Counted from the first letter of the stretch, positions 5,511-52,994 are shown. The stretch is DNA of 64,000 bases from Macrostomum lignano (GCA_002269645.1 NIVC01000952.1:400967-464966); one strand, 5' to 3'. Notes: generated by a model from the letters alone, not told the origin. Made by a program: numbers and translations.

Positions 5511-15117
<9,607 letters not shown>

Positions 15118-27900: not shown

Positions 27901-28299
27901 GGATAATTGAGGGTATATGTATATGTGAATAGCTATATATAGCCTTTAGATACACTATGCAATAGCTGGTAATTAATTGGTATAAGTACAATTATTATTA
28001 TTATTAGTATTATAATTGATATAATTTAAATATTAATAATAATAACTGGTATATAGTTGTTATTATATTTTTATTCATATTATTCATATTAGCCATAAAA
28101 AAGCCTACAAATATTTATTATAAAGGCATCTAGATAAGTGACTTGATCTAAAATGTGACCATTATTGGCTAGGGTCTAAAATATTCATATAATAAAACAA
28201 ATATAATTAAACTATGATCCATAGGCCTAGTCAAGAAGGTGCACTGTGTTTGCTGGAATAAACTTCCCATATTTATTTATTATATGCCATGCATTAAAG

Positions 28300-28502
28300 C
28301 AGCAGTTTTCAACCTTTTTAGGCAACCCTAATTTATTAACTTGCATCATTTTAAAATGTTTGCAACCCCTTTTATAATCAATATAATGCATCATTAAATA
28401 TGATTTACTCACACATTTCTCATTGCTGCAACCCCCAGAAAATGGTCACATAATCCCACTGGAGGTTGCATGACATCTCAACCCACAAGTTAAGAACCAC
28501 TA
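28300..28502. mobile_element. Old ~200-bp hAT (Charlie-like) MITE
   Basis: Left end CAGCAGTTTTCAACC and right end AGTTAAGAACCACTA both resemble the CAGTGGTT.TCAA type TIR. Internal GCAACCC repeats. 8-bp flanks cattaaag/tgctaaat share TAAA. Confidence 0.5.
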
Positions 28503-32755: not shown

Positions 32756-35700
32756 ATGCAGGCCCAACGCTACAGGCCGGCCTCCGCGTCGCCCTACCGA
32801 AGCCCCGGCGCCGCATTCTACGGCTCAACTGGCCGGCTCAGCTCGCTGGACAGGCGCGGCTATCGCAGCCCCGACAGAGGCGGCCTCATCGACCGCGGCA
32901 TCAGGTTGGCTTGGCTGTGCAATTGGGGCTGAACTAGGGACAGGCTGGGAGAAGTAGAGAGAGACTGTGAGGAGTAGAGAGCGAGACTGTGAGAAGTAGA
33001 GAGAGACTGGAAGAAGTAGAGAGCGAGACTGTGAGAAGTAGAGAGAGACTGGAAGAAGTAGAGAGAGACTGTGAGAAGTAGAGAGCGACTGGGAGAGGTA
33101 GGGAGAGACTGGCAGAAGTAGAGAGAGACTGGGAGAAGTAGAGAGAGACTGGGAGAAGTAGAGAGAGACTGTGAGAAGTAGAGAGAGACTGGGAGAGGTA
33201 GGGAGAGACTGGCAGAAGTAGAGAGAGACTGGGAGACGTAGAGAAGACCGGGAAAAGTAGGGACAGGCTGGGAGAAGTAGGGAGAGACTGAGAGAAATAG
33301 GGAGAGACTGGGAGAGGTAGGGAGAGACTGGCAGAAGTAGAGAGAGGGACTGGGAGAAGTAGAGAGAGACTGGGAGACGTAGGGATAGACCGGGAAAAGT
33401 AGGGACAGGCTGGGAGAAGTAGGGAGAGACAGAGAAATAGGGAGGGACTGGGAGAAGTAGAGAGTGACTGAGAGAGGCAGAGAAGCAGTGTGAATGAAAG
33501 TCGGCAGAAAATTCCCTCATTCACGGAACGGCTATGCATCACCGAATCAAACTTGGCAGTTCTACAACCCAATTTATCTCAGTTCGTGATAATTTCCTCG
33601 ATTCCAACTTTTACTTTTCTACAAATTGCATATTTTTGCTTTTCCTGTCAGCCGCCCCTGTTTACCGGTGCGCCCGCGTTGCCTGTCGCATCAGTTGAGT
33701 ACTCGTGTTTGAGCACTCGAATCTGCAGCGGAGCGTGCGGTGGGCTGCTGAGCGCTTCTGAGAGCTGCACCCGCCTGCCTACCACGCATGTTGCGGCAGT
33801 TTCTCGGCAAGCAGAGAGACTGGGGGGGGGGGGAGAAGCCTCAGCTGCATCAATTTCTTTCCGTCTTTCCGTCGCCCTAAATGTAGAAAATCTCTGTACC
33901 CTCACTGTGCTCAGCCCTGTCGCTTTGCAGTTTCTCTCTGGCCTGAGAGCTGCTCGCTGCTGCCATTCTTGGCTTTTATGTGCTCACCGGGTTTTTATCT
34001 GGCATTCTTGTGCGCAGTTGAAAGCAGCCGAGCTCTTCAGCAGCGAGTAGTCACGAAATAGTTAACACCGGGGCTTGTGAGGCCTCATCCACTTGCGACT
34101 CTGACAGATTCCTGTTTAGCATAAAGTTTTATTTTATTTCCCGGCACTTTTCAATGAACCTCAGTCTCTGCTCCTTTTATTCTAAATGATTGCTGGTTTA
34201 TGTTGCAGTTTTTTATTTGTTGCAGAGAAAACACCTGGGCAGTGCGCATTGGTCTGTTGGTCCCTTTGGCGTGTAGGGCTTAGGAAGTTCAGGCTGACTT
34301 CCGTCTCAACGGGTGACCCCTGTCCTACAGGTGACTCCCCCTGTCCTACAGGTGACTTCCCCTGTCCTACAAGTGACTTCCCCCTGTCCTACAAGTGACT
34401 CCCCCTGTCCTACAGGTGACTTCCCCCTGTCCTACAGGTGACTTCCCCCTGTCCTACAAGTGACTCCCCCTGTCCTACAGGTGACTTCCCCCTGTCCTAC
34501 AAGTGACTTCCCCTGTCCTACAAGTGACTTCCCCTGTCCTACAAGTGACTTCCCCTGTCCTACAAGTGACTTCCCCCTGTCCTACAAGTGACTTCCCCTG
34601 TCCTACAAGTGACTTCCCCCTGTCCTACAAGTGACTTCCCCTGTCCTACAAGTGACTTCCCCCTGTCCTACAAGTGACTTCCCCTGTCCTACAGGTGACT
34701 TCCCCCTGTCCTACAAGTGACTTCCCCTGTCCTACAAGTGACTTCCCCTGTCCTACAGGTGACTTCCCCTGTCCTACAGGTGACTTCCCCTGTCCTACAG
34801 GTGACTTCCCCCTGTCCTACAGGTGACTTCCCCTGTCCTACAAGTGACTTCCCCCTGTCCTACAAGTGACTTCCCCTGTCCTACAAGTGACTTCCCCCTG
34901 TCCTACAAGTGACTTCCCCTGTCCTACAAGTGACTTCCCCTGTCCTACAGGTGACTTCCCCTGTCCTACAGGTGACTTCCCCCTGTCCTACAGGTGACTT
35001 CCCCTGTCCTACAAGTGACTTCCCCCTGTCCTACAAGTGACTTCCCCCTGTCCTACAAGTGACTTCCCCTGTCCCACTAGTGACCCATTTTTACAGGTGA
35101 CCTTCCTTCCTGCGTTACAAGAAAAAAATAGGGTCTGACATAAATTAAGAAAACTTGATTCTAAAATGTGCAAAACAGCCTTCCTTAGACTTCCTCATCC
35201 GCATCGCCTCATCTGTGCCACCCAGCTTCACAGTGAACAGCCTGCGGGAGTCGCGGCAGGAGCTGGCCTCCATAGCCAACGATATTGATGAATATCTCGA
35301 CGAGAAGGAGGCTGCGGCGGATGAGGCCACTTCCGAGAAGCTCCGCTACCGGCAGCAGCGGCTGTCGCGCTCGCCTTCGCCCTCGCCGTCGGCGAAGCAG
35401 CGGCGCACGTCGCCGAGATTCGCTCCCGCCTCCGCCGACTGGAATTACGGGGACACGGCGCCGCAGGTGAGGCTGCGATTGAGAAGATGGGGATAAGGGG
35501 CTCCATGAGGGGACAAGAAGCGTCATGAGGGGATAAGGGGCGCCATGAGGGAATAAGGGGCGCCATGAGGGAATAAGGGGCGCCATGAGGCGATAAGGGG
35601 CGCCATGAAGGGATAAAGGGGCGCCATGAAGGAATAAGGGGCGCCATGAGGGAATAAGGGGCGCCATGAGGCGATAAGGGGCGCCATGAAGGGATAAAGG

Positions 35701-38700
35701 GGCGCCATGAGGGAATAAGGGGCGCCATGAGGGAATAAGGGGCGCCATGAGGCGATAAGGGGCGCCATGAAGGGATAAGGGGCGCCATGAAAGGGATAAG
35801 GGGCGCCAGAAGGGGATAAGGGGCGCCATGAAGGGGATAAATGGCGCAATGAGGGGATATGGGGCGCCATCAGGGGACAAGAAGCGCCATGAGGGGATAA
35901 GGAGCGCCATGAGGGGATAAGGGGCGCCATGAGGGGATAAGGGGCGCCATGAGGGGATAAGGGGCGCCATGAAGGGGATAAGGGGCGCCATGAAGGGGAT
36001 AAGGGGCGCCATGAGGGGATAAGGGGCGCCATGAGGGGATAAGGGGCGCCATGATGGGATAAGGGGCACCATGATGGGATAAGGGGCACCATGATGGGAT
36101 AAGGGGCACCATGATGGGATAAGGGGCGCCATGAAGGGGATAAGGGGCGCCATGAGGGGATAAGGGGCGCCATGATGGGATAAGGGGCGCCATGATGGGA
36201 TAAGGGGCACCATGATGGGATAAGGGGCGCCATGAGCTGCTTATCGAGTCAAGAAGCTCACAGCAGTTCTGCTTATAAAAATTTGAATTCATTTTCAAGC
36301 AAGTTTTGGTTTCAAACCTTCAGCCCAGCTCTCATCACCCCGGCTACGGCAGCCAGCCGGCGTACCTGCCTCCGTCGGCCCCGCCGCCTCCGCCTCCTCC
36401 GCCGCTGCCGCCGCAACCGACGCCGCGAGCGGAACCTTTGAAAAATGAAAATGAACGACTTCGACTGGAGATCAAGGAGCTCAACGACTCGTGAGTGACC
36501 GCCATGGTGTGACTTTTGCCTCGCATCGGCTGATGCACAAGGGTTCCTCCGACAAGGGGATAGATAGCATTATAGCATTATAGCATTATAGCATTATAGC
36601 AATAGAATGGATTGCTAATCTACTCCTCATACATGGGGAATAGAATGGATTGCTAATCTATTCCTCAGACATGGGGAATAGAATGGATTGCTAATCTATT
36701 CCTCAGACATGGGGAATAGAATGGATTGCTAATCTATTCCTCAGACATTGGGATAGAATGGATTGCTAATCTATTCCTCAGACATGGGGATAGAATGGAT
36801 TGCTAATCTATTCCTCATACATGGGGAATAGAATGGATTGCTAATCTATTCCTCATACATGGGGAATAGAATGGATTGCTAATCTATTCCTCAGACATGG
36901 GGAATAGAATGGATTGCTAATCTACTCCTCAGACATGGGGAATAGAATGGATTGCTAATCTATTCCTCAGACATGGGGAATAGAATGGATTGCTAATCTA
37001 TTCCTCAGACATGGGGAATAGAATGGATTGCTAATCTACTCCTCAGACATGGGGAATAGAATGGATTGCTAATCTATTCCTCAGACATGGGGATAGAATG
37101 GATTGCTAATCTATTCCTCAGACATGGGGATAGAATGGATTGCTAATCTATTCCTCAGACATGGGGAATAGAATGGATTGCTAATCTACTCCTCAGACAT
37201 GGGGAATAGAATGGATTGCTAATCTACTCCTCAGACATGGGGAATAGAATGGATTGCTAATCTATTCCTCAGACATGGGGATAGAATGGATTGCTAATCT
37301 ATTCCTCAGACATGGGGATAGAATGGATTGCTAATCTATTCCTCAGACATGGGGAATATAATGGATTGCTAATCTACTCCACTCGAACTACCACTCCAGG
37401 CTGAACAACCAGACCAAGAAGCTGGACCAGCTGGCACCGCTGGCCAAGAGTCTGGAGCAGGAGCTGGCGGACAGTCAGGATCAGACAGACCGGCTCGGTG
37501 ACGCCCTGGCTGAGAGGGACCAGCAGAACAAGCAGCTGGGCAATGTGAGCTGGTGATGGTGCAGTGTGAGCTGGTGATGGGGCAGTGTGAGCTGGTGATG
37601 GTGCAGTGTGAGCTGGTGGTGGGGCAGTGTGAGCTGGTGATGGTGCAGTGTGAGCTGGTGATGGGGCAGTGTGAGCTGGTGATGGGGCAGTGTGAGCTGG
37701 TGATGGTGCAGTGTGAGCTGGTGATGGTGCAGTGTGAGCTGGTGATGGTGCAGTGTGAACCGGTGATAAAGAGCATATTTAATATTTCAAGAACCGATGG
37801 CTTCCAGGAGCTGCAGCTGGCGAAGCGCCAGACGGAGGAGTACCGCAGGCAGATGGAATCGCTGACCCGCGCCCTGAAGGAGAAAGATGCTGCGCTGGGC
37901 GCGAAGCAATCGGAGCTTGACTGTGCCAAAAATGTGAGCTCATTTCATCATAAACATCTCAAATAAGTTGTTGCTTAATTCGACATCTAGATATCCCCAA
38001 TTCGACACCTTGATATCCCCAATTCGACATCTAGATATCCCCAATTCGACACCTTGATATCCCCAATTCGACATCTAGATATCCCCAATTCGACACCTTG
38101 ATATCCCCAATTCGACATCTAGACATCCCCAATTCGACATCTAGACATCCCCAATTCAACATCTAGATATCCCCAGTTCAACATCTAGACATCCCCAATT
38201 CGACATCTAGACATCCCCAATTCGACATCTAGACATCCCCAATTCGACATCTAGACATCCCCAATTCAACATCTAGACATCCCCAATTCGACATCTAGAC
38301 ATCCCCAATTCGACATCTAGACATTCCCAATTCGCCAGTAGCCACACTCAGCCGCGTCTCCAGCTTCCCCGCTCGTCGAAAATCCCCAGGAGGCAGCCCA
38401 GCAGCAGTCCGAGGCTGATTCGGCCAGGGACGAGGCCGCTCACCTGAAGAGCCTCAACGCTGTGCTCTGCAAGGAGTGCCAGGAGCTCATCGGCCACATG
38501 GCCAGGCAGCAGGAGGTGGGTTATTGGTTGGATTTGTTGGCAGTGTACATTGTGTTAGACAGGTGTTAGATGCCTGTTAGACAAAATCTAGAACTGTTAG
38601 ACCAAATCTAGATCTGTTTAGACATGTTAGACATGCATATTAGATACCTGTTAGACAGATTCAGATCTGTTAGACATACTGGACAGCTGTTAGACAGAAT

Positions 38701-41700
38701 ATAGAACTGTTAGACATGCCGGACACCTGTTAGACACAGCCTGGTCCCGTCGAACATCCGCAGGAAACTGCAGGCCTCCGCGCCCAGCTGCAGGCGCTCC
38801 GCCGCGAGCGTGATCACGTGACCTCGGAGCTGGCAACCGCGGCGGCCGAGCGCGACCGGATGAAGGCCTCGCTGCTGGGCATCGACAGCTCCGATTCGCG
38901 CAGTCCAGCCGAGGTCATGGCCGACGACCTTCGACAGGAGCTGCTGCTGGCCCGCCAGGAGGCCGACCGGCTGCAGGCGCGGTGCGCCGGCCTTGACGAG
39001 GAGCGTGCCGGGCTGCAGGAGGCGCACGACAGCCTGCTGGGCGAGCTGGGGGCGCTGCGCCGCGCCCTGGCCACCTTCCAGGAGACCGTGGCTGGCGAGA
39101 ACCGCGCCATCGAAGAGGAGAACCGGCGGCTTGCGCGCGAAAACGAGGAACTGAAGCGGGGGAAAAGCCGGCCAGCAGGCAGGTCGAGGAGCGGCGAGGA
39201 CGGCCTGGGAGAAAGCGATGAGGAGTGAGTTCGGGTCGGATGGGGTCAGACTGGCTCGAAGTAGGCTAGATTGGGTGAAGGAAGTGAGTCAGAATAGGTA
39301 ACGGCGAGTCGGGAAATATTAGAGTGAGTCATGCGCTTCACAGAATGTGTTAGACTATGATCAAAGTGAGTCAGAGTGCGTCAGAATGGGTCAGAGTGAG
39401 TCAGACTGGGTCAGAGTGAGTCAGACTGGGTCAGAGTGAGTCAGAATGGGTCATAGTGAGTCAGAATGGGTCATAGTGAGTCAGAATGGGTCATAGTGAG
39501 TCAGACTGGGTCAGAGTGAGTCAGGCTGGGTTAGAGTAAGTCAGCCTGGGTTAGAGTGAGTCAGAATGGGTCAGAGTGAGTCAGACTGGGTCAGAGTGAG
39601 TCAGACTGGTCATAGTGAACCGGACAATTCTTTCGCAGACTGGACAACCGCTTGCAAAGCCAGTTAGACGAGCTCCGACATCAGAACCGGCAGCTGGCCC
39701 AGGAGAATGAGCAGCTGAGCCGACCTGCTGCATCCGGCTACCGGCTGCCAAGTGAGTGCTGACCGCACCTTGTCAACCCCCTTGTGCACCTCCTGATATC
39801 CCGTTACATTCACTTTGCTTATTGAAGACTTGGGAGCTGCAGCCTCAGCCCCGGGCCTCAGCCGCGATCTGCAGGACGTCCAGACCAGGCTTGCGGAATC
39901 GCGCGACCTCCTGGGTCGTCAGCAGTCGCTCATCGACCAGCTGGAGGCCGGGTTCGATTCGCCTCCGCAGCAGCGGAAGCGACCATCGACAGCAGCCGGA
40001 ATCGGGACGGCGGCAGCGGCAGCCTCATCGGCGACGTCTCCGGAGGTAGCAGCGCTGCGGCAGGAGATCGGCCGCCTGCGCCAGCTGGCCACTGAGAGCC
40101 AGCAGCGACGGCCGGAGGTTGACGATCTTCTAAGGCGGCTGTTAGAGGACAGGTAAAAGTCACTTTAACTCATATTTTCCTCAAACGAGATCCCAATAAA
40201 GACTCCCAACTCTGCTCTCACCGACAGCCGCGGCAAAGACGAGGCGATTCGCGCCCTGTCCGCTCAAGTCGATGCTCTCAAAGCGTCAAGACACTCGCAG
40301 CAGCCGTCCGGTGCTGACGATGGGGTCAGCCAGGACGATGGTCTGAGGAATCGAGTCCGAGACCTGCTGACCGACTGGGGCCGCTTTCAAGGCGACCTGT
40401 CCGGCCAGTTGCGCGTCGAGTCGGATGACCGACGGCAGGCCATCCGCGAGCTGGACAGCCGCTTCCAGGCGCTCGCCAATGAGCTGGAGGCGCTGCGCCG
40501 GGGCCGCGGAAGCGCCAGAAACGCCCAGTCCCAGACCCAGACGCCTTGGTTGAGACGACCGCCCGATCCGCAGCAGCAGCAACAACAACAGCAACAACAA
40601 CAGCAACAACAACAGCAACAACAACAGCAACAACAACAGGCTTCGTCCAACGCGGTCTCTTCAGACGACGGCCTGCACGAACGGCGGCCGTCGTCAAAGA
40701 AGCCGACGCACCTTGGCGAGGCCAAAGCTCGCTCGGATTCTTTAAACTTGCATCGCCCGCCAGCTGAGCAGCCGCACGGCACGGCTGGCGGGCCAAGCGT
40801 TGCCAATAGCAACGCAAACACCGCAGCCGCAGCAGCTGCCAGCGACAGCACTAAAAATATCCACACGCAGACGTCTCCACCGCCCCAAGCCTGCCCCGAG
40901 CATTTTTTCAATAGTTTGCCTTACTTCGAAGGCCCCCGACTCTACGATGAGGTCTCCGATGCCGAGGGCCTGCTGAGCGACGGCAAAGGACGCCACACAA
41001 CGGTTGAAAGCGGCGCCTTTCATCAGCAGCCGCACCTGCAGGGGGAGCCGTCTGGCACATCGGAATCCGCTAATTTGAACCTGCGCTCAGGCCCGCAAGA
41101 CCAAGGCCGAGCTGATGGGCAGTGCAGCAGCATGTGGGCCAGGCTCAGGTCGGCGAATGCAGGAAACGAAGGCCCCACAGCGCAGTCGCAGCGACAGCGA
41201 GCCAAGAGACAGTCCAGACGGAGCTTCGCCAGCTCAGCCAGCCCATCGCTGCCGGGAAGTCCGCGCCAGTCCGGCCTTCGAGACTCAGCCGGGTTGCACA
41301 GTGAGCGGTCCTTGAGTGGCAGCCCAGCGCGGAGACCGTCGTCTCGTAGCAAAGCACCATGGGACCGTCACGAAGAACGCAACGATTCCGACGAGACTCT
41401 GTCTGGTTCACCGCGACGATCTCGACGCGACAGCGGAACTCGGCGGCGCAAAGTTCCAAAGCTGAACCTGGGCAGCGAGGTCGGGAGCCACGGGCGGCCT
41501 CTCAGCGCAGAAGAAGCAGAAAGTCGAAGCCGAGCAGAGCAGAGCCGGTTGGAGGCTTCAAAGGCTCCAGTTGACAACCTTGGCTTCCGCGTGCCCAGAG
41601 GCGAGGCTAGACATCCCAGCTTCGAATCCGACAGCGGCAAGAGCGCCCGGTTCTCGTCAGACAGACAGGCGCGCGAAAAGCAGCCACGCTCAAGTCTTCG

Positions 41701-44700
41701 AACCTACAGTCAGTCGGAAGCCAGCGTTGGCGAGTCCACCGGCACGGTGAGGCCCACAGAGGCCAATCGACAAGGCGAGTTGTCTAATGAGCCAGCCCCA
41801 GGACGCGGTGTGCGGAGACGCGAAGGTTCTGGATCCGACAGTGAGGAATCGAGAAGCTCCCGGAGACCGAGCGAACTTGGATACAATAGACGCCCTGATG
41901 ATGATGTTTTCAGTGACAGAGACAAAACCGGGAGCCCAGACAGGCATCCTGACAAACCTAGCCATGCGAATTCCAGCGACAGGACTCTAGATGCGCGGGA
42001 TTCCCAGTCAGCAAGTGCCAGGGACAAGACTCTGTATAAGCAGCGCAACGATTCTCATTCTCCCAGTAACAGGGATCAAAGTCAAGGTGAAAGATTTGTC
42101 GATTCTCAGCCAACGAGTGCCAGAGACAGAAGTTGGTATCAGCAATTCGACCAGCTTGGCAGGACCAATTCTCAGGCCGGCAGCAAAGATGGACGCCGCA
42201 CAGGGGAATTCGAAAATAAATCAAATGCTGCGATTAGTAGAGATGGATACCCGGATCAACGATATGACGGTATAGCAGTGAGTAACAGGGACAGAAGTCC
42301 AGACGGACGGTATGACGGCTCTCAGCCTCCCAGCACTAGAGACAGAAGCCGAGACAGACGATATGACGGGTCTCAACCTCCCAGCGCGAGAGACAGAAGC
42401 CGAGACAGACGGTATGGCGGCTCTCAGCCTCCCAGCACTAGAGACAGAAGCCGAGACAGACGATATGACGGGTCTCAGCCTCCCAGCGCGAGAGACAGAA
42501 GCCGAGACAGACGATATGACGGGTCTCAGCCTCCCAGCGCGAGAGACAGAAGCCGAGACAGACGGTATGGCGGCTCTCAGCCTCCCAGCACTAGAGACAG
42601 AAGCCGAGACAGACGATATGACGGGTCTCAGCCTCCCAGCGCGAGAGACAGAAGCCGAGACAGACGATATGACGGGTCTCAGCCTCCCAGCACTACAGAC
42701 AGAAGCCGAGACAGACGGTATGACGGCTCTCAGCATCCTTATGCGAGAGACGGAAGTCGAGACAGAAGCCGAGACAGACGTTATGACGGCTCTCAGCCTC
42801 CCAGTGCGAGAGACAGAAGCCGAGAGAGACACAAAGACGACTCTCATCCACCCAGTGCGAGAGACAGAAGCCGAGACAGACGTTATGACGGCTCTCAGCC
42901 TCCCAGTGCGAGAGACAAAAGCCGAGAGAGACGTTATGACGGCTCTCAGCCTCCCAGCGCGAGAGACAAAAGCCGAGAGAGACGTTATGACGGCTCTCAG
43001 CCTCCCAGCGCGAGAGACAGAAGCCGAGAGAGACACAAAGACGACTCTCATCCACCCAGTGCGAGAGACAGAAGCCGAGACAGACGTTATGACGGGTCTC
43101 AGCCTCCCAGCGCGAGAGACAGAAGCCGAGACAGACGGTATGGCGGGTCTCAGCCTCCCAGCACTACAGACAGAAGCCGAGACAGACGGTATGACGGCTC
43201 TCAGCATCCTTATGCGAGAGACGGAAGTCGAGACAGAAGCCGAGACAGACGATATGACGGCTCTCAACCTCCCAGTGCGAGAGACAGAAGCCGAGAGAGA
43301 CACAAAGACGACTCTCATCTACCCAGTGCGAGAGACAGAAGCCGAGACAGACGTTATGACGGCTCTCAGCCTCCCAGCGCGAGAGACAGAAGCCGAGACA
43401 GACGTTATGACGGCTCTCAGCCTCCCAGTGCGAGAGACAAAAGCCGAGAGAGACGTTATGACGGCTCTCAGCCTCCCAGCGCGAGAGACAAAAGCCGAGA
43501 GAGACGTTATGACGGCTCTCAGCCTCCCAGCGCAAGAGACAGAAGCCGAGACAGACGTTATGACGGCTCTCAGCCTCCCAGCGCGAGAGACAGAAGCCAA
43601 GAGAGACACAAAGACGACTCTCATCCACCCAGCGCGAGAGACAGAAGCCGAGACAGACGTTATGACGGCTCTCAGCCTCCCAGCGTGAGAGACAGAAGCC
43701 AAGAGAGAGACAAAGACGACTCTCATTCATTCAATAAGAGACACAAAAGCCAAGACAGAAGGTATGACGGCTCTCAGCCTTACAGCGTGAGAGACAGAAG
43801 CCTAGAAAGAGACAAAGACGACTCTCATCCATCCAATAAGAGAGATAGCAGCCGAGACAAACGGTATGACGCCTCTCAGCCTCCCAGCGCGAGAGACAGA
43901 AGCCGAGAGAGACAAAAAGACGCCTCTCAGCCTCCCAGCGCGAGAGACAGAAGCCGAGACAGACGATATGACGGGTCTCAGCCTCCCAGCGCAAGAGACA
44001 GAAGCCGAGAGAGACACAAAGACGACTCTCATCCACCCAGTGCGAGAGACAGAAGCCGAGAGAGACACAAAGACGACTCTCATCCACCCAGTGCGAGAGA
44101 CAGAAGTCGAGACAGACGATATGACGGGTCTCAGCCTCCCAGCCCGAGAGACAGAAGCCGAGACAGACGGTATGACGAGTCTCAGCCTCCCAGCACTACA
44201 GATAGAAGCCGAGACAGACGGTATGACGACTCTCATCCACCCAATAAGAGAGACAGAAGCCGAGACAGACTGTATGACGATTCTCAGCCTGTAAGTCTGA
44301 AAGACCGACCCCAAAATAAGCAACACAGTGAACTGAATTTTGCCAGCACAAAGGAGAAAAATAAAGACAGGCGGTACGACAGCCATCAGCCTCCCAGTGC
44401 GAGAGACAGAAGCCGAGAGAGAGACAAAGACGACTCTCATTCATCCAATAAGAGAGACAGAAGCCGAGACAGACGGTATGATGATGCTCAACCTCCCAAT
44501 GCGAGAGACAGAAGCCGAGACAGACGGTATGATGATGCTCAACCTCCCAATGCGAGAGACAGAAGCCGAGACACACGGTATGACGGCTCCCAGCCTCCCA
44601 GTGCGAGAGACAGAAAACGAGAGAAGCAGAAAGATGACTCTCATCCAACCAGTGTGAGAGACAGAAGTAAAGACGGACAGAAAGACGACTCTCATCCTCC

Positions 44701-47700
44701 CAATGCAAGAGACAAACGGTACAACGGTTCTGAGGATGAAAACAAAGGAGGTCGAGATGGACGATTAGACAAAAATAGAAAAAGCGATTTTCATGATGCG
44801 AGTTTCACGCACAGATCGAAAGACAAACATGATAGCGAATCTTGCAATGCTGGCGCCAAAGACAGAAGGTACGATGACTCACAGCTAACGAATTCTGGAG
44901 TCAAAGAAAGTCTCGACGGTGAATCTCATCCTACCAGTGCCAGAGACAAAAGTCGAAACAGACGGCACGGTGATACTCATGCTGTACTTGACAGTGACGG
45001 AGATGTAGACAATCCTTTTAACAGAACTGGCAGGCACGATTCACAGGATTTGAGTACGAGAGAAAGACCCTGTGTTGGACTCAATGCCGAATTTTATTCC
45101 CAAAGCACAAACGACGGCGACGAACGGTACAACGATTCTCAGCGTGTGCGTGGGAAACACAGGTTTAAGCCGGAATCGGAAGGTGAATCTCAGAGTAAAA
45201 GTGCAAAAGACGGAAGTGAAGATCTGCGAAATGACGACTCTCTCGCGGTCAGTGCCAGAGATCAAAGCCGCGACCGATGGTGCGACGACTCTCATCCTGC
45301 CAGTGCGAGAGACAGAAGTGAAGAAAGACGATACGACCCTCGACCTGTGGGCGAAATAGACGGACAGAGGGAAAAACTGGACGGATCTTTTGATTCGAGT
45401 GACAGAGACAGAAGTCAAGACAAACGGAACGAAGACTCTCATTCTTCCAGTTCCAGAGACAGGCGCCAGAGACAGGAGACAGGAGAAACGTCCGTACCTC
45501 GCTATACAAACGATGCTAAACAGCCTGCTGAGATGAGCCCAGGCGATTGGCGCAAAGGACAAGTTAAGCTTGACGCAAAGCCTGAAGCCGGCCATCAACC
45601 CAAGGACCAGTCAGTATCAGTGAGTCCTCGGCACCAGAGCAAGCCAAGTGGACAGAGTCTAAACGAAGCCGATAAGCCAGCTGCCGAAGTGGAATTCAAG
45701 TCTGGTGAAACGAATTCTCGGCTAGAAAGTCCCATTGCGCGACGTGACTCTACGAGGCAAGTCGACGCAAAGTCGCCAAGCCGCAGACGAGACACCAGTC
45801 GAGACAGTGATGGTCGGAGAAGCAGAAATGAAAAAATATCTGGAAAGTACTCTGGGCCTGTCAGCGCTAGCAGGCAGTTTGAAGGTGGGCATGAGAGTGA
45901 CATTGATAGAAGCGCCAGATACAGAGATGGAAGATCCACTCCAGATCTTGGCTTGCAAAGAACACCTCGAGGCAAACAACCTGGCAGTTCGGTAACAGAA
46001 GCTGGTGAACGGAAACCTCCGGGTGAACAGCCAAGTGCAGACAACAGAAGCGGGCAGAGCGGAACCGATTCGGACATTGATGCTGGCCAGAAACAAAAAT
46101 CTAGGCGCTCTTCGACAGCTTCTCCAGCAGGTTCTCACCCCGACAAACAGGGACAATTACAAAGCAGTGATCCATCAAGGAGCCGAACACGCGACTCTGA
46201 CGGAGATCGCTCCGAAAAGTCATCGAAGACAGCCAGAGCGGACAGTTTTGCGACGAAAGCAGCATCCACTAGCGACGGACAGCAAAGGAAGGGAAATTTG
46301 AAGTCCACGTCTGGTAAATTATCTAATGAAAGTTCCGCGAAGGATGATGGCCCAAGTATGGCAACTGCGTCCTTGAGTGCCGAAGTCGATCCCAGCAGTT
46401 CAACGTCGAAGCCGGCGCGAAGTCGGTCCGGCGGTTCCGTCAGTCCAGCCCGAAGAACTCGCTGGGAGGACGAGGAGCAGCTGAAAGCAGAGCGAGGCGA
46501 AGTGCCTGAAGACGCAGTTATCGCAGCGAGTCGAGACGATCTCAACGTCGGTGCTAGTGAACATCGACCTGATTTCACTCATCGATCTGACGCTGTTGAC
46601 TCGAGAAAACGTCCAGATTCAGGTGGAAAGACTGGTCTACGCAGCTTAGCTGACAGTGATCAGAGAGATTTTAGTAGCGATGCGGATGGTGATGCAGTCC
46701 ACGGTCAAGACCGTCCAAGTAGTAGAGGACGCGAAACAATGGCGAACTCAGAGAAGCTCAAAACATCCACAGAGGAATTGAACGACGCAATTCAACACGC
46801 GGATGCCATGGTTCGCAGGCATGGAGGTCGTGATGGAGGGACTGACAATTCATTGACGAAAGCAGATTTGAACCAATTAGGATCGAACTCAACTACATTC
46901 TCTGACGCTGAGACGTCCCCGAGAAGCAGTGCAGCCGACTCTGAGATGGCCAGCAAAATTTTAGGCAAAAGCATTGCTGGCGAGAACTCAGAAAAGCCCC
47001 AAAGTGATCCAAAAAAGCATAACAAAGGCCTAAGTGATCAAGACCCCGAAAGTCCCAGCGAGGCGTCCACTGTGCGTGGGGAACAAGCGCAACTCAGTGC
47101 TTTTGATTCGCCTTTGCAAGCCGTTTCGAACACGGGAAGAACCAGGAGGGACACGCAATTGGAGGACGATGATTCGAATTCACCAAGCATAAAAGGTCAA
47201 ACCGTGGATCGAGACCGCACAAGTGCTGGAGAAAGTTCAGCTGGGCTACGAAGTGACTCACCTGATCAGTCTGAAAGATCTGACAGCGCTGTTGAGAGGA
47301 GATTGAGCCCGACAGAAAGCTGGCAGAAATCTGCCAGATTGTCAACGGCAAGCGGAAAATCTCTTGATGACGCTGAAGTCTGCGATGGAGGTCAACAAAA
47401 TAAAGCCGAAAAGACAATGCTTGATGACGAGCTCGGAGTGTTGAAGTTAGTTGATTCAAAACCCGGATTTGATGGCCAACTGGATCCAACAAAGCGGGCG
47501 CAAATCCATGGCCAGAATGCGGGAACTGCGGGTTCTGAACCGGATACACTATTGGGGAAAACTGGTAAAGACGGGGCTCAACTACCAGGTGATAAGCAAC
47601 GAGTTGAAAGTACCACGGAATCGCATGCGCGAGATGAACGAAGATCAAGTGAATCAAGCGCATCGGATGCTGAAGTTGCTCGTCACGCTGCTGAAGACTC

Positions 47701-50700
47701 CAAGCAGAAGCCGCTGATTCGCTTGGAAGAGCCAACGGATTCCGCATCGTCGGGCGGTGATGCGCATCGCGGGAAGCCGAGTGGCGTTGGAGAAGGCTCA
47801 TCGAAGCAGCACGAGAACCGGCGCACACCTGAGCATGGCTGGAAAGAAGGCAGGAAGTCAGAGATGGAGCCTGACAATTATAAAAACGATTCTAATAAAG
47901 AAGAGAAAGACACCCGAGGCGGCGGCGAAAAGGGTAAATTTTCAGCGCAAGGAAAAATCAGTTCAAACGAAGAAACTTCCAGTGAGTCGATGCCGGATGC
48001 AGACACTAGCAGAGAGGGCAGGCCAGTGCGATCTCAGCCAGACTCCAAGGCTGCTCTGAACTCAGACAACCTCGCGACCTTTGCGAATAAACTCGACCAG
48101 ACGACCATCAAAGAGGCTCAACAGAGTCTGGAGCACCGGGTGCCAGTGACAGCGGTCAGTTGCGTCAGACAGCCCGACTTGGCGACAGCAGGCTCAATCA
48201 GCCAGGTGGAATTGACAGCAATAGAAGTCTAGACGATCAAATAGCACTATAATACCAGAGAGTAGAGTCGAAAGTTTACAGCAGATGGCTGCTGTTTTAG
48301 ATAAGGCAGCTTCTGGGCGAGCAAACCTGAAGCAAAGTGGTCCAACAGGACTGATGCCTCAAGAAGACAGATCTCCAGAGCTGCCAATTAGAGATAGCGG
48401 TGCTATTCGCGTTGAAGGAGAAACTTATTTTACTGATCAGTCCAGAACCGTCGTATCGCCAAGATCTCCATCCGGGCAGTCGGTTGGCGGGGAGTTCGGC
48501 ACTCATGCAGGATCGGGCATTCCCGTGCCGGTGAGGCGCCTGCAGCCTCGGTCTTCTAGCGCAGGACGAACCGAGCAGGAGCAGCCGCCCCCACAGCAGC
48601 CCGTCTCGCTAGCGTCTCCTCCAGTTCGCGGAACAAGTCCGTTTTCGACTGGCTCTGAACAATTTTTCTCTGGCTCAAAGATTCCAACGCGACTGAAATT
48701 CGAGCAAAAGAGCTCTTCAAAAGACAGTTACAGCAAAGACGCAACTGACGGAGTAGACCATTCCCAGAATAAAGCGGGAGATGATGCAGTAAATTCAGTC
48801 ACGACGGTAAGCTCAGCTGCAACTGTTCAAGGAGAGTTCGTTCAGGAAGATACTTGCATTAAAACCCGGATAAGCCAGCCTCCTGAAGAGTCGCTTAACT
48901 TTAGCATCGAGTTGGCGCCAGAGCAACGAGTTCGCACAGAGGTCCTGGGAGCCCAGGGCGATGCAAAGTCGTCAGAGAACACGCAAATACAATCGGCAAG
49001 ACAACAAGCGCTTGAACTTGGGCTTCGGGGCCAACAAAAACTCCTGCAAGGAACCGATGCGAGCGACAGTGCCAACAGGCCCCAAAGTCAATCTGCTGAT
49101 AATTCTTCCTCAGAAAATACATCCGAAGATAAATTCGACCGCCCACCTTCCTGGACTATAAAAGATCCCAGTGGAACATCATCCGGCAGGTCGGACGACT
49201 CTCCCAATGCCGATAGGAGCGACAGTCGAAGGCTACCCGGAGCTGGCAGGGACCAAATGAGCCAGAAGTTGGCCCAAGCAGACACCGATGCGATAGGTCA
49301 TGCAACACAACAGGAAATGTCAAAGAATTTTGATTCGCAACCTGTTGAAAGCAAGCAGAAAATTCCAAGCTCGGCTCATGGATCACAGCAAAAAAGCCCG
49401 AGCGAGAGTTACTTGCATCCGGACAATGCAGGAAATTTGGAAGAACCCGAGTACTCGGACAGCTTCACTGAGGACGTCTCCAATGACCGGACCGCCTCGG
49501 GGACTCACGACTCGGGCAAGAAGTCCAGCGAGTCCGGCCCGGATTCGATTCGGCACCGCCAGGAGTCCGCGGCAGAGAACACATTCCAACCGGCTGTGGC
49601 CGGCCAGAAGCCTGCAAATTTTTCCAGGAATCTCGACGCTGATGGAGAGCTAAGCCAGGCAGGCGGACGATCGGAGAGCAGCTTCGAGGCTGATGTGGAG
49701 CTATCGGATCCCAGCGCAGCCGGAGAGCACGCGGGTTCGTCGCTGTCTAGGCAGGAGCTGAAGGGCTCCCAGGGCTCCGGCAGGCAACCGCAGCAGCAGA
49801 GGACGCAGCAGCAGCATCCGGTTTACAGCAGCAGCCTCAGCAGCTCGGGCACTGTTAGTCCTAATGAAGTACTCAATGTGAAGCGCTCAACAGGTGAGAA
49901 ATTTATTAATGCGTGAAATGAAAAGGCATGCACTACCTACGCGTGCTTTCAAGCTCAGGCTGTCTCGTAAACGCAGCTGAAAAGTTTAAACTGTTCGGGC
50001 ACGACGGACCCATGGGTAGGACCCATAATCATATAAACCCTCAAGGCGTCGTCAGGAAGTATATGTGGGTTGGGGTTGAACGAACTGTCTCTGAGCTGAC
50101 AGCCACCCTCCTTTATGCAAAGACGATAAATATTTTATTTCTTATTTCAATGTTTTAAGAACGACCAACACAGCCGGGCAGCGCGTCGGCCGCAAGAGGG
50201 CCGGGCAAGGTGCGCGCTCGCAGCAGCTCCGAGTCGGAGATTTCCCAGCAGCACGAGCCGATCTTTGTTCGCATCGCAGTCAACGATCGGCGCAAACGCG
50301 ATGGCGTCCAGCTGTGTCGCAGCGTACCGAACCTCAGCAGCGTCAGCGGAGGCGGCGAAGACCTCGGCAGCCGGCAGCTGGAGCAGCTTGCACCACAACC
50401 GATGTCGCCTCCGACAGGAAGTCGCGACGCTTCCGATGCAACTTCCATGCTGACGCAGTCGGCGCCTCCAATCATGAACCCGGACATGCAGCAGCAGCGT
50501 CTGCTCCAGCAGGACCTGCGGAACACGCTGTCCGATTTGGACGACGAAGAGTTTGAAGCTTTTGTCACCGGCGTGGATCAGATCGTCAGCCAGATTCGAG
50601 CCGAGGCTGAGGAACCTAACGAGCAGCTGGAGCTGCCCGCGATCGATACTCGACTCCCTGATCCGGGCAGCAACCGCCTGTACTCCTCCGACTCCGAGGC

Positions 50701-52074
50701 CAACGACGTCTGCGGCACGCCTTCGCGGGCCAAGATCCTGAGCTCTTTGCGGGCGACTCGGCAGAATCGAAAAGCCGCGGCCGCAGCAGCCGGCACTGAA
50801 GGTTCCTCGACTGGTGCCTCAGCAAGCGATGCTGAAGGCTCCGGCGAAGGTGACCGACAGCGACCGCCTCGCCGCCGCCCGCCACAGCGCCGCTCCCAGT
50901 CCGCCACGAGTCGCTCTAGCGAAGCCCTTGGTGACAGCCGTCGCTCTAATCCGCTGCGTCGGAGGACGCCACAACCGTCGCCGATGAAGCCACCGGCTCC
51001 ACTGCCGTCGCAGCTGCCGCGGTTCAGCGTCCGAGTTAGGCCCGAAAACGGAGGCGAGACGGCCGAGGCCGAGTCGCATCGCCCACAACCGGTCACCGAC
51101 CCGACGCACGACGCGCTGATCGAGGCGGCCAAGCAGAAAGTTGCAAGGATCAGAGGTGAAGGCCGTCGAGCCGCATCAGGAGGGACCTCCTCTGAAGATG
51201 ACGACACTCTGAAGGACGAAACAGATGACAGCGAAGCAAAGGAAAGAGCAAAATCAAACGGAGGCAATCAAACTGACACGGAAATCTCGTCAAGTGTTCT
51301 ATCGGACGAAGCTGACAAACGTGCGGAGGCACCAAAGCCGACGGAAGCTGTCAAATCTCCCAAGGTCGAGGCCCGATCCACAGCCTCGGTGCTGCTCCCC
51401 GACATGCCGCGCATGGTCAGCGGGAAGTCAGTCGCGAGGGCGACTGTAACCCAGATGTCAGCCGCGGCTCAACCGTCGGAGTCTCGACAGCTGCGCCTGC
51501 CGCGGCGCGTCGGGCCCGACGGCTTCCTGAGCGACGGCAGCATCTTCTCGGACGATGACAATCTGCAGCGCCGTCGGCTAGCTGCCCGCGCGGGCCGGAT
51601 TCACCTGCTGGCGCTCGAGTCCTCCTTCGAGACGCTGTACGATCCGAGCCTGCAGCGCTCGGACGGTCTGTCAGTTGGCCGGGACTCGAGCCAGGACATC
51701 CGCCTGAGCAGCAGCTCGGCTTCGGAGAATGACGCGGCGGGAGAGCGTCGTTTGGGTCGGCAGCCGCTGGTGGATCTGCTCGAGGCCGCTGAGGCTCCAT
51801 CCAGTGGCGGCGACAACGGCGCCTCATCGTCGCCCAGCGCATCCGACGCAGAGGTTCTACGGGAGATGGAGCTTAGGTGAGGCTGGGTACGAGCGTAGCA
51901 CACTTGGGGCTTCAATTCGTTAATTTTTGCTTCCTGTAAAAGAGCGGATAAGAATCCCTTTAAGCCTCATGTGATTATTAATATTTTCGAAGAATGGACA
52001 CTCCTTTCTGCCTTAGGAAAGAAATTGAAGGCTCAAGGATTCCCGTAGAGTACTGTTATTTTCGAGCTCCATGA
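32756..52074 (+). CDS. Giant uncharacterised protein, ~4,380 aa: N-terminal coiled coil, polyQ, then a huge S/R/D-rich disordered region. 13 exons: 32756-32904, 35226-35466, 36324-36490, 37400-37544, 37808-37933, 38390-38515, 38764-39224, 39639-39751, ~39843-40152, 40228-~48154, 48282-49893, 50160-51876, 52017-52074
   Basis: Every junction has GT/AG and matching phase (13,152 nt in total). Heptad-like exons such as LKNENERLRLEIKELNDSLNNQTKKLDQL. The model joins supplied ORFs 40409-48232, 48285-49916 and 50210-51880. No catalytic domain recognised. The acceptor at 39843 and the donor at 48155 have in-phase alternatives. Confidence 0.8.
32930..33470. repeat. ~20-bp purine-rich degenerate minisatellite, intron 1
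   Basis: gggagaagtagagagagact units. Confidence 0.9.
34310..35075 (+). repeat. 21/22-bp minisatellite, intron 1, with AG|GT-containing units
   Basis: ttcccc(c)tgtcctaca(g/a)gtgac units. Confidence 0.95.
35495..36235. repeat. 20/21-bp minisatellite, intron 2
   Basis: ggggataaggggcgccatga units. Confidence 0.95.
36600..37380 (+). repeat. 37/38-bp minisatellite, ~20 copies, intron 3, preceded by (agcattat)n
   Basis: aatagaatggattgctaatctattcctcagacatgggg units. Confidence 0.95.
37538..37765 (+). repeat. 21-bp repeat x10 starting at the exon 4 donor
   Basis: gtgagctggtgatgg(t/g)gcagt every 21 bp from 37545 to 37734, with a decayed copy at 37755. Confidence 0.95.
37975..38335. repeat. 22-bp minisatellite, intron 5
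   Basis: ccccaattcgacatctagacat units. Confidence 0.95.
38545..38735. repeat. Decayed repeat with a tgttagac core, intron 6
   Basis: About ten ctgttagac(a) motifs with variable spacing. Confidence 0.7.
39360..39615 (+). repeat. 20-bp minisatellite containing GTGAGT, intron 7
   Basis: gtgagtcaga(c/a)tgggtca(g/t)a units. Confidence 0.9.
40571..40639 (+). repeat. PolyQ tract (23 Q) in the giant protein
   Basis: (CAG)3 followed by [(CAA)3 CAG]x5. Confidence 0.95.
42280..44700 (+). repeat. 51-bp coding repeat (17 aa, RDRSRDRRYDGSQPPSA and RDRSRERHKDDSHPPSA variants), ~45 units
   Basis: agagacagaagccgagacagacg.tatgacgg.tctcagcctcccagcgcg units, in frame within the giant exon. Confidence 0.95.
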
Positions 52075-52994
52075 CGCGTCTTCATTAAAAATCTCCTTTA
52101 TTAAAATTAAATTATTGTGTAACCACCTATCCCCGGATGATTCCAGAAACTCAAAGCACCAGTTGGAGCTGCTGCAAGAGGACTGAAAGCAACAGGTGTC
52201 ATAAACGGAGACAGGAAATGCATGCCTCGCTAGCCTCATATGCGTTATGCATGTACCTGCGTATCGTATTTGCACCGAGAACCAAACTTTTCCATGAAAA
52301 CTAATTCCAAACTTCAAAACACTCCACGACTTCCACATTTAGCCCGAAATTATTTTTCATCGCTTTTACTTTTGTTGAATTGGTTTCATCGTGAGTCTCG
52401 CGTCGCACAATAACACTTATTTGAACTGGTGCGAATTTGTTTTACCGCACTTTTTGCCAATTAAAAAACGCACTTTCAGCTACTCTTCCGCGCGAACTCT
52501 GCCTGGCTTTTGACAAGCCAGTCCGCATTGCGTACATTCCTATAGCTGGTTGACTTTGCAACTATCATGATACTATTTTTGAAACTTTTAATCAGATCTT
52601 TTCATCTGTAATTTGTTGGCGAAATAATATTTATCTTTGTTAACTTGCTCACTAAAAGTTTTATAAACAAATCTCTATAAATTTTTTACAATATTTTACA
52701 ATGTGTAATTTTTTAAATCGAATTTTACATCAATGCGAGATCAGCTGTTTGTTTAAATCAAAGTACACTCGAATCCGCTCCCGTCTCCGCGCTACGGAAT
52801 TAGGCCAAGTTCATCTGTTAACTGTTTCTAAGAAACAACTGTTTAATTTTACAATTATTAGCAGCTCGACTTGCTTAGAGTTGAAAATAATCAATGATAA
52901 GCATTCAGCATCCTGCGAGTGCATGTTGACTTTTGTTTGTCCAAACTATTGTCTTTTTGGACACAGTCAATATCCATCAAATCAGCGTTACCAT

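What the first reader, a model, noticed from the sequence alone, without database searches (positions are those of the whole stretch)
40228..48154. Giant coiled-coil/IDR protein with ~45 arginine-rich mixed-charge 17-aa repeats in one ~7.9-kb exon
Seen: RDRSRDRRYDGSQPPSA repeats over ~2.4 kb with very high DNA identity and an internal block duplication (the STTDRS...QHPYARDGS variant at ~42691 and ~43162). They follow a ~600-aa coiled coil and a polyQ tract. Established: RD/RS mixed-charge domains (U1-70K, LUC7L, SRRM2 type) drive condensate or speckle localisation and are SR-kinase substrates. Inference: an undescribed lineage-specific scaffold, e.g. for a granule, centrosome or rootlet, or sperm. 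No signal peptide is seen.
Basis: partly seen in the sequence, partly recalled or inferred. Interest (0 to 1): 0.7.

Follow-up and report, generated by a model that had tools for sequence, protein, structure and literature searches.

The report
Giant flatworm protein with arginine-rich repeats
A real gene of about 4,300 codons, found so far only in the flatworm Macrostomum, has an in-frame array of 47 arginine/aspartate/serine/tyrosine-rich 17-residue repeats inside one 7.9-kb exon; it is a new example of a familiar kind of disordered, repeat-bearing scaffold protein, and its function is untested.

Summary
Exon 40228-48154 (7,927 nt, + strand) has canonical splice sites and no in-frame stop. 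The other five frames have 46-181 stops. It contains a 23-residue polyQ tract and 47 tandem 51-bp (17-aa) units at 42287-44707, consensus RDRSRDRRYDGSQPPSA. A 471-bp higher-order duplication is 93-98% identical between copies.

A neighbouring gene identifies the source as Macrostomum lignano or a very close relative. I assembled an 11-exon, 4,335-aa model whose 5' end is unresolved. It has a discontinuous coiled coil of about 520 aa, then about 3,650 aa of Ser/Arg/Asp-rich disorder.

Variation among units is concentrated at third codon positions (pN/pS about 0.46), so the peptide appears to be under selection.

The last large exon has one relative among 1.84 billion representative proteins: a fragmentary M. 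lignano UniProt model (A0A1I8FYU8). That model splices the whole array out and is named "CAP-Gly domain-containing", which its sequence does not support.

The array fails the published mixed-charge-domain criterion unless every serine is phosphorylated, and it is not an RS domain.

The best reading is a coiled-coil-anchored, multivalent polyampholyte scaffold. A role in a nuclear or RNA-protein condensate is plausible but unproven.

The window is 34% tandem repeats, so a coding minisatellite here is not surprising. Interest is modest.

The parts
35189..35466 (+). Most 5' exon I could place (inferred). [quoted passage not shown]
   Evidence: Acceptor ccttAG|, donor CAG|GTGAGG, in phase with the next exon. 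A phase-0 AG at 35177-35178 would put the ATG that ends the M. lignano spliced leader (PMC8629364) in frame. This is a hypothesis only.
36300..36490 (+). Exon (inferred): poly-Pro tract, then the start of the coiled coil (alternative acceptor at 36324).
   Evidence: Splice sites and phase.
37792..37933 (+). Coiled-coil exon (inferred).
38342..38515 (+). Coiled-coil exon (inferred).
38734..39224 (+). Largest coiled-coil exon (163 aa; alternative acceptor at 38764).
   Evidence: AlphaFold2 gives helices 9-47 and 58-144 with pLDDT mostly above 90; heptad scan.
39639..39751 (+). Leucine-zipper-like mini-exon (LDNRLQSQLDELRHQNRQLAQENEQL).
   Evidence: Needed to restore the reading phase. The public model P0010 starts exactly here, at 95% identity.
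39828..40152 (+). Coiled-coil exon.
   Evidence: 97% identical to P0010 residues 36-145.
40228..48154 (+). The giant exon of the finding: 7,927 nt, about 2,642 codons.
   Evidence: Splice sites; 0 in-frame stops against 46-181 in the other frames.
40571..40639 (+). PolyQ tract, 23 Q (CAG/CAA).
41441..41452 (+). RRRK, a candidate nuclear localisation signal (motif match only).
42050..42286 (+). Decayed repeat relics 5' of the array.
   Evidence: A profile HMM of the unit finds weak matches here (best score 0.7, below the score-5 cut-off used in the shuffle control). Motif remnants are visible by eye.
42287..44707 (+). Array of 47 units of 51 bp (17 aa). About 34 are A-type (RDRSRDRRYDGSQPPSA) and 12 are B-type (RDRSRERHKDDSHPPSA).
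42494..43570 (+). Higher-order repeat: a 471-bp unit (9 units plus a 12-nt RDGS insert) in about 2.3 copies, 93-98% identical.
44708..45466 (+). Decayed repeat relics 3' of the array, for example RDQSRDRWCDDSHPASA.
   Evidence: 2 matches score at least 5, against 0 in each of 20 shuffles.
48282..49893 (+). Exon of 537 codons, Ser/Gln-rich and disordered. The acceptor is a NAGNAG site (48282 or 48285).
   Evidence: P0010 blocks are 85-94% identical.
50160..51876 (+). Last large exon, mostly disordered, with four main isolated helices.
   Evidence: AlphaFold2: 415 of 573 residues have pLDDT below 50; helices at 108-151, 190-211, 315-334 and 465-493, plus two short ones. 94% identical to P0010.
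50480..50611 (+). Confident amphipathic helix (...DLDDEEFEAFVTGVDQIVSQIRAEAEE), a candidate docking motif.
   Evidence: pLDDT 87-94; heptad scan.
51521..51646 (+). They lie in and next to helix 465-493.
   Evidence: Conserved in P0010.
52147..52186 (+). Terminal mini-exon (R)NSKHQLELLQED plus the TGA stop.
   Evidence: 100% match to the last 13 residues of P0010. Donor AG|GTGAGG at 51876/51877.

Best explanation
Shown:
- This is a genuine protein-coding gene of Macrostomum lignano or a very close relative. It has at least 11 exons and 4,335 codons, about 480 kDa.
- Exon 40228-48154 is coding throughout.
- The 47-unit array is a coding minisatellite. It grew by unequal exchange, including a recent 471-bp (nine-unit) higher-order duplication.
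- The array has stayed strictly in frame. Its units differ mainly at synonymous sites.
- Its edges have decayed into unique sequence.

Inferred:
- The N-terminal coiled coil of about 520 aa, which includes a leucine zipper, pairs or bundles the chains.
- The remaining ~3,650 aa form a disordered, Ser/Arg/Asp-rich tail.
- Each repeat is an 8-residue alternating Arg/Asp block (RDRSRDRR, net +3) followed by a 9-residue uncharged spacer with one Tyr, one SQ and a PP (YDGSQPPSA). Forty-seven copies would make a high-valency 'sticker and spacer' polyampholyte, with net charge about +0.09 per residue and pI about 10.8.
- Such a region would bind RNA or acidic partners and self-associate through Arg-Asp and Arg-Tyr contacts. 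Phosphorylation of the RDRS and SQ serines could tune this.
- By analogy with alternating, mildly positive Arg/Asp domains, the most likely location is a nuclear or RNA-protein condensate.

My rough probabilities are 0.9 that this is a real coding gene, 0.75 that the array is translated in the main isoform, and 0.35 that it acts in a nuclear or RNP condensate.
For: Coding:
- There are 0 in-frame stops in 7,926 nt, against 46-181 in the other frames. The introns I inferred have stops in nearly every frame.
- The 11 exons join in phase into 4,335 codons with only the terminal stop.
- An independent public model shares my exon junctions from 39639 onward, and also the terminal mini-exon.

Array under peptide-level constraint:
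- Differences from the consensus by codon position are 49/80/148, and pN/pS is about 0.46.
- Twelve units with the identical peptide are encoded by 8 different DNA sequences.
- The array length is exactly 47x51+24 nt.

Growth and decay:
- The lag-471 duplication is 93-98% identical.
- Decayed relics flank the array.

Architecture:
- Of 11 heptad-like segments, eight lie in residues 12-674 and the other three are short (29-32 residues).
- AlphaFold2 gives long helices for exon 38734-39224 and mostly disorder for the last large exon.
- Overall composition is S 14.8%, R 12.8%, D 9.9% and Cys 0.3%, with no membrane-spanning stretch.

Analogy to function:
- Alternating Arg/Asp repeats enter nuclear speckles in a length-dependent and Arg-dependent way (bioRxiv 10.1101/771592).
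- Alternating patterning with a small positive net charge favours speckles over nucleoli (PMC9324279).
- The array has R 197 against K 30 and a net charge per residue of +0.087. RRRK and RRKR motifs are present elsewhere in the protein.
Against: - I could not examine any transcript, localisation or phenotype data.
- The array fails the published mixed-charge-domain criterion in its unphosphorylated state.
- The only public gene model splices the array out.
- The pN/pS figure counts units rather than independent events, so inherited changes are counted several times.
- The window is 34% tandem repeats, and two other genes in it carry in-frame repeats. Expansion alone is therefore unremarkable here.
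- The coiled coil is equally compatible with a cytoskeletal role.
- The 5' end is unknown, so a targeting sequence cannot be excluded.
Confidence: 0.5

Rival explanations
1. The array is a neutral coding minisatellite. A repeat-prone genome expanded a 51-bp unit inside an already disordered region, and the repeats are tolerated rather than used.
For: - Thirty-two high-scoring tandem arrays cover 34% of the window.
- Simple and tandem repeats make up 15% of the M. lignano genome (PMC5730564).
- The glycosyltransferase gene (33 bp x 4.4, 100% identical, 1920-2065) and the E2-like open frame (15 bp x 35, 24420-24942) also carry in-frame repeats.
- The 97-98% identical higher-order copies indicate recent turnover.
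Against: - Variation is biased to third codon positions and pN/pS is about 0.46.
- Identical peptides are encoded by different DNA sequences.
- The diverged 3' third of the array (1,020 nt) still has 0 in-frame stops, against 6 and 23 in the other frames.
- The motif survives in decayed flanks.
Confidence: 0.25
2. The array, the polyQ segment and other pieces are removed by splicing as exonic introns. The main protein would then lack the repeats, as in UniProt A0A1I8FYU8.
For: - P0010 omits 40415-40768, about 42313-45106 and 46314-46880 (block ends as reported by the alignment: 42311-45106 and 46313-46879).
- Each omitted piece can be bounded by GT...AG, and each is a multiple of 3 in length.
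Against: - Every omitted piece has 0 in-frame stops, against 2-58 in the other frames.
- The proposed donor (CG|GTATGA) and acceptor (ccaaAG|) are weak compared with the gene's GTGAGT/GTGAGG donors.
- The multiple-of-3 lengths follow from how the model was built, so they are not independent evidence.
- Repeat masking, or short-read transcripts that collapse repeats, commonly create such gaps (inference).
Confidence: 0.15
3. It is a cytoskeletal scaffold or microtubule-associated protein (centrosome, ciliary rootlet or sperm). The coiled coil would build the structure and the basic repeats would bind acidic tubulin tails.
For: - A long N-terminal coiled coil.
- A basic array with pI 10.8.
- The source name 'CAP-Gly domain-containing protein' for P0010.
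Against: - No CAP-Gly domain is found in P0010 (Pfam), in the upstream open frames, or as a GKNDG-type motif in any frame of the window.
- No cytoskeletal Pfam family reaches its cut-off.
- Alternating Arg/Asp blocks largely neutralise themselves, unlike typical Lys-rich microtubule-binding repeats (inference).
Confidence: 0.2
4. It is a secreted structural or adhesive protein like the giant, repeat-rich, lineage-specific Mlig-ap1 and Mlig-ap2 of the same species.
For: M. lignano makes 5,407-aa and 14,794-aa adhesive proteins with Lys/Arg-rich regions, 46 tandem repeats and no homologues in NCBI nr (PMC6410801). The 5' end of the present gene is unknown.
Against: - Cys is 0.3%, and no lectin, vWD, EGF or TSP domain is present.
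- The charge is acid-balanced (array pI 10.8, against a reported pI above 14 for Mlig-ap1).
- There is an intracellular-type coiled coil and a polyQ tract.
Confidence: 0.03

Closest known systems
Arginine-enriched mixed-charge domains of nuclear-speckle proteins (U1-70K, CPSF6, NELF-E; Greig et al., bioRxiv 10.1101/771592; Miyagi et al., PMC9324279)
   Same: - Alternating Arg/Asp runs.
- Arg is strongly preferred over Lys (197 against 30).
- A small net positive charge.
- Predicted disorder.
- Serines placed where phosphorylation would add negative charge.
   Different: - The charged blocks are only 8 residues long and alternate with 9-residue uncharged Tyr/Gly/Ser/Gln/Pro spacers.
- The fraction of charged residues is therefore 0.48 (maximum 0.58 in any 60-aa window), below the 0.7 used to define the class.
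- The region is a regular 47-copy array rather than an irregular low-complexity run.
- No RNA-recognition motif accompanies it.
- There is no sequence homology.
Giant-exon tandem-repeat scaffolds such as SON, SRRM2 and Ki-67 (from my own knowledge; not tested here)
   Same: One very large exon encodes a long disordered region with in-frame tandem peptide repeats in a scaffold-sized protein.
   Different: - None of the accompanying domains is present (G-patch and DSRM of SON, cwf21 of SRRM2, FHA of Ki-67), as Pfam finds no family.
- This protein has an N-terminal coiled coil instead.
- There is no detectable homology.
UniProt A0A1I8FYU8 (M. lignano, 'CAP-Gly domain-containing protein', 2,507-aa fragment)
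   Same: It is the same gene or a near-identical duplicate. Most aligned blocks are 91-99% identical (two fall to 81-85%) from exon 39639 to the terminal mini-exon.
   Different: - The public model lacks the upstream exons, the polyQ segment, the entire array and other stop-free pieces.
- It reads some stretches in shifted frames.
- Its name is not supported by its sequence.
Mlig-ap1 and Mlig-ap2 adhesive proteins of M. lignano (PMC6410801)
   Same: They come from the same species, are giant and lineage-specific, and have basic or repeat-rich regions.
   Different: They are secreted, Cys-rich and carry extracellular domains, and their Lys/Arg regions have pI above 14. The present protein is Cys-poor, acid-balanced and begins with a coiled coil.

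Membership tests
Arginine-enriched mixed-charge domain (operational definition of Greig et al., bioRxiv 10.1101/771592) | [quoted passage not shown] | tested here: not met
   The maximum is 0.583 anywhere in the 4,323-aa version of the model that was scanned (it lacks only the 12-residue terminal mini-exon), and the array mean is 0.476. It reaches 0.717 (57 windows) only if every Ser counts as negative.
Arginine-enriched mixed-charge domain | Positive-to-negative charge ratio between 1:0.7 and 1:1.3. | tested here: inconclusive
   The array has 227 positive and 157 negative residues, a ratio of 1:0.69, just outside the range. With all Ser phosphorylated it is 1:1.28.
Arginine-enriched mixed-charge domain | Arg rather than Lys supplies the positive charge. 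| tested here: met
   197 R against 30 K in the array.
Arginine-enriched mixed-charge domain | Drives condensation and incorporation into nuclear speckles. | not testable with these tools
   This needs expression and imaging.
SR-protein RS domain | A region dominated by consecutive RS/SR dipeptides, normally together with an RRM. | tested here: not met
   There are 38 RS and 40 SR dipeptides in 807 aa, about 19% of residues, always as an isolated RSR. No RRM or any other Pfam domain is found.
CAP-Gly domain proteins (the name carried by the UniProt relative) | A CAP-Gly domain (Pfam PF01302, GKNDG motif). | tested here: not met
   Pfam finds none in P0010 at E up to 1 or in upstream open frames. 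No G[KR][NHS]DG motif occurs in a plausible context in any of the six frames of the window.
Coding minisatellite (in-frame tandem repeat) | Head-to-tail copies, unit length a multiple of 3, reading frame kept throughout, higher-order structure. | tested here: met
   Period 51, 47 copies; the only indels are two 12-nt insertions; 0 in-frame stops; a 471-bp higher-order repeat.
Coding minisatellite | Copy number varies between individuals or gene copies. | not testable with these tools
   The matching region of the Mlig_3_7 scaffold NIVC01000506.1 could not be fetched. Only the first ~13 kb of the window is covered by L001.
Coiled-coil protein | Long helices with heptad periodicity. | tested here: met
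   The crude heptad scan places eight of its eleven segments in model residues 12-674. AlphaFold2 gives helices of 39 and 87 residues with pLDDT mostly above 90. No dedicated coiled-coil predictor was available.
SQ/TQ cluster domain (at least 3 SQ/TQ in 100 aa; definition from my own knowledge) | Density of SQ/TQ motifs. | tested here: met
   There are 34 SQ in 807 aa, and 87% of 100-aa windows hold at least 3. This is a count only; whether ATM/ATR-type kinases use these sites is untested.

The most novel reading that the evidence does not exclude
A Macrostomum-specific, coiled-coil-dimerised protein uses a 47-valent Arg/Tyr 'sticker' array, tunable by serine phosphorylation, as the organising scaffold of a flatworm RNA-protein body, such as a speckle-like nuclear body or the chromatoid bodies of stem and germ cells. 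Array copy number would set the properties of that body. This would be a lineage-born scaffold that is functionally analogous to SON and SRRM2 but unrelated to them.
Probability: 0.12. Interest if true: 0.6.

Novelty: new member of a known kind. Interest (0 to 1): 0.3.

Why it matters
If the array is translated and functional, it would be a natural, very regular sticker-and-spacer polyampholyte in an animal that supports RNAi and transgenesis. That makes it a convenient system for testing how valency, charge patterning and phosphorylation set condensate behaviour in vivo.

In practical terms, the result shows that the public gene model for this locus is badly fragmented and misnamed. Repeat-bearing exons in this repeat-rich genome are being annotated away as introns. 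This affects proteomics and any screen that relies on those models.

Tried and rejected
- **Word-indexed homology searches.** I searched the last large exon and a spliced 684-aa N-terminus. Low-complexity words (polyP, polyA, polyS) may have crowded out true relatives, so I treat these nulls as weak.
- **Chimeric query for the exhaustive search.** Only the last large exon was therefore searched exhaustively.
- **Pfam and PDB.** Pfam on every exon, on the joined N-terminus and on P0010 gave only sub-threshold coiled-coil noise (Golgin_A5, SOGA, ATG16, TSC22). PDB sequence searches of five segments gave nothing significant.
- **Rfam.** No RNA family was found in the window.
- **Exact-product look-ups.** Two window ORFs and P0010 are not on record.
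- **First exon.** A search for an ATG-initiated first exon in 30000-35188 gave no convincing candidate.
- **Literature.** Full-text searches for the accession and for the repeat peptide found nothing.
- **Fold search.** I did not run one, because neither AlphaFold2 model contains a globular domain.
- **Adhesive-protein reading.** Rejected on composition and domain content.

Full report
**What is there**

The window is eukaryotic. It has GT-AG introns of 75-1,300 nt, many of them filled with minisatellites.

The exon in the finding is real.
- It is bounded by an AG acceptor at 40227/40228 and a GTCAGT donor at 48155.
- It lies in a reading frame open from 40169 to 48229.
- Across 40229-48154 the coding frame has no stop. 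The other two forward frames have 46 and 181, and the reverse frames have 48-101.

**The repeat array**

- Tandem Repeats Finder reports a 51-bp period with 47.1 copies at 42290-44714.
- Read in frame, this is 47 units of 17 residues at 42287-44707, with consensus RDRSRDRRYDGSQPPSA.
- About 34 units are of this A type. Twelve are a B type, RDRSRERHKDDSHPPSA.
- The only length changes are two identical 12-nt insertions encoding RDGS.
- A 30-nt core of the unit occurs 31 times, all inside the array, against none expected.
The TDRS...QHPYA-RDGS variant lies at 42695 and 43166, and 300-bp blocks are 93-98% identical at a lag of 471 bp over about 42494-43570. This is a nine-unit higher-order repeat in about 2.3 copies.
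- Identity is high in the 5' two thirds (mean 88% for the first 27 units) and lower toward the 3' end.
- A profile of the unit finds decayed relics on both sides, from about 42050 to 45466. The array is therefore old at its edges and recently homogenised in its core.
- A 23-residue polyQ tract lies at 40571-40639.

**The gene**

By following splice sites and reading phase I joined 11 exons into 4,335 codons (about 480 kDa, pI 8.7) with only the terminal stop. The exons are:
- 35189-35466
- 36300-36490
- 37792-37933
- 38342-38515
- 38734-39224
- 39639-39751
- 39828-40152
- 40228-48154
- 48282-49893
- 50160-51876
- 52147-52186

The 5' end is unresolved, because the first exon I can place has no ATG. 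M. lignano trans-splices about a third of its genes to a leader that ends in ATG (PMC8629364). A phase-0 AG at 35177-35178 would put that ATG in frame. This is only a hypothesis.

A crude heptad scan places eight of its eleven coiled-coil-like segments in residues 12-674; the other three are short. AlphaFold2 folds exon 38734-39224 into two long helices with pLDDT mostly above 90.

The other ~3,650 residues are Ser/Arg/Asp-rich. They have 0.3% Cys and no membrane-spanning stretch.

In the last large exon, 415 of 573 residues have pLDDT below 50. It has only isolated helices.

**Organism and relatives**

The neighbouring glycosyltransferase gene (1709-3115) matches Macrostomum lignano proteins at 91-98% identity. 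The Mlig_3_7 scaffold NIVC01000506.1 is collinear with the start of the window at about 96-98% DNA identity. The window is therefore M. lignano or a very close relative. It is a different copy from that scaffold, which fits the known redundancy of this hidden polyploid (PMC5730564).

An exhaustive phmmer search of the last large exon against 1.84 billion representative proteins found exactly one relative. This is UniProt A0A1I8FYU8, a 2,507-aa M. lignano fragment named 'CAP-Gly domain-containing protein'.

Ungapped tblastn shows it is the same gene or a near-identical duplicate.
- Most aligned blocks are 91-99% identical; two fall to 81-85%.
- It starts exactly at my exon 39639.
- It ends with a mini-exon that I had missed.
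- It independently supports my junctions from 39639 onward.

That model treats several pieces as GT-AG introns:
- 40415-40768, the polyQ region
- about 42313-45106, the whole array
- 46314-46880
- other segments

Every one of those pieces has zero in-frame stops against 2-58 in the other frames, while the introns I inferred carry stops in nearly every frame. I therefore regard them as annotation artefacts, probably from repeat masking or collapsed short-read transcripts. Real exonic introns cannot be excluded without RNA data.

The CAP-Gly name is not supported. Pfam finds no such domain in the model or in the upstream frames, and no GKNDG-type motif exists in the window.

No Pfam family reaches its threshold on any exon. 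No PDB sequence matches significantly.

The two word-indexed searches returned nothing but hit their candidate cap. The N-terminus has therefore not been searched exhaustively.

**Is the array translated and constrained?**

- Differences from the unit consensus fall 49/80/148 on codon positions 1/2/3.
- Per-site non-synonymous to synonymous difference is about 0.46.
- Twelve units with the identical peptide are encoded by eight DNA variants that differ only synonymously.
- The diverged 3' third of the array still has no in-frame stop, against 6 and 23 in the other frames.

These counts are not independent events, because units are copied. Even so, they point to selection on the peptide in this frame.

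**How it probably works**

Each unit is an alternating Arg/Asp block followed by an uncharged spacer with one Tyr, one SQ and a PP. The array is 24% Arg, 17% Asp and 17% Ser. Its net charge is +0.087 per residue and its pI is 10.8. It contains 34 SQ motifs.

Alternating Arg/Asp repeats enter nuclear speckles in a length-dependent and Arg-dependent manner (bioRxiv 10.1101/771592). Alternating patterning with a small positive charge favours speckles over nucleoli (PMC9324279).

By analogy, I infer a coiled-coil-paired, high-valency polyampholyte scaffold that binds RNA or acidic partners and is tuned by phosphorylation.

Membership in the known classes fails on test. No 60-aa window reaches the defining charged fraction of 0.7; the maximum is 0.583, or 0.717 only if every Ser is phosphorylated. 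RS/SR dipeptides cover about 19% of residues and no RRM is present. The array may work like a mixed-charge domain, but it is not a member by the published definition.

**Context and verdict**

Thirty-two strong tandem arrays cover 34% of the window. Two other genes in the window carry in-frame repeats. The same species is already known for giant, lineage-specific, repeat-rich proteins (PMC6410801).

The finding is real, and it improves on the public annotation. It belongs, however, to a familiar kind: a lineage-restricted disordered scaffold with a coding minisatellite. There is no functional evidence yet. I give it an interest score of 0.3.

Noticed in passing
window 1709-3115 (+), repeat at 1920-2065: A single-exon type-II glycosyltransferase (Pfam Gly_transf_sug, DXD motif), 91-98% identical to M. 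lignano proteins. Its stem region carries a perfect 33-bp x 4.4 in-frame repeat (TPKTGHKTDSQ).
   Followed up: partly
window 24207-26240 (-), repeat at 24420-24942: A 678-codon open frame on the minus strand begins with the C-terminal half of a ubiquitin-conjugating (UQ_con) domain. It continues into a long acidic tail and then a 15-bp x 35 repeat read as LTLHS/LTLHP. Where the exon really ends was not determined.
   Followed up: no
whole window, for example 6631-7635, 22247-24037, 58499-60900: Tandem-repeat load is extreme. Thirty-two strong arrays cover 34% of the 64 kb, including (CTGT)x251, a 22-bp unit x82 and a 28-bp unit x85. Most introns of the giant gene are filled with 20-38-bp minisatellites.
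   Followed up: partly
P0010 (UniProt A0A1I8FYU8): The public name 'CAP-Gly domain-containing protein' has no support in the sequence. The model also reads some stretches in shifted frames (for example residues 1285-1312 match frame +3 at 47526-47609) and reads through my intron 48155-48281, which suggests indels in that gene copy or modelling errors.
   Followed up: partly
window 35177-35190: The first placeable exon has no ATG. A phase-0 AG at 35177-35178 would let the ATG that ends the M. lignano spliced leader start the reading frame (M-PSLDFLIRIASS...).
   Followed up: no
window 48280-48285: A NAGNAG tandem acceptor (cAGcAG|ATG). Either site keeps the reading frame, and the two differ by one Gln.
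   Followed up: no
window 50480-50611 and 51614-51646: A confident amphipathic helix (EEFEAFVTGVDQIVSQIRAEA) loosely resembles kinase-anchoring docking helices. SSFETL has the form of an LC3-interacting motif. Both are pattern resemblances recalled from memory, not tests.
   Followed up: no
L001 (NIVC01000506.1:195364-216143) against window 1-8700: The published Mlig_3_7 scaffold is collinear with the window at only about 96-98% identity, and its repeat arrays differ in length. The window is therefore another copy, haplotype or assembly of this locus.
   Followed up: partly
window 27000-32500: An AT-rich stretch (31-33% GC) with no long open frame separates the E2-like gene from the giant gene. 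It contrasts with 50-62% GC elsewhere in the window.
   Followed up: no
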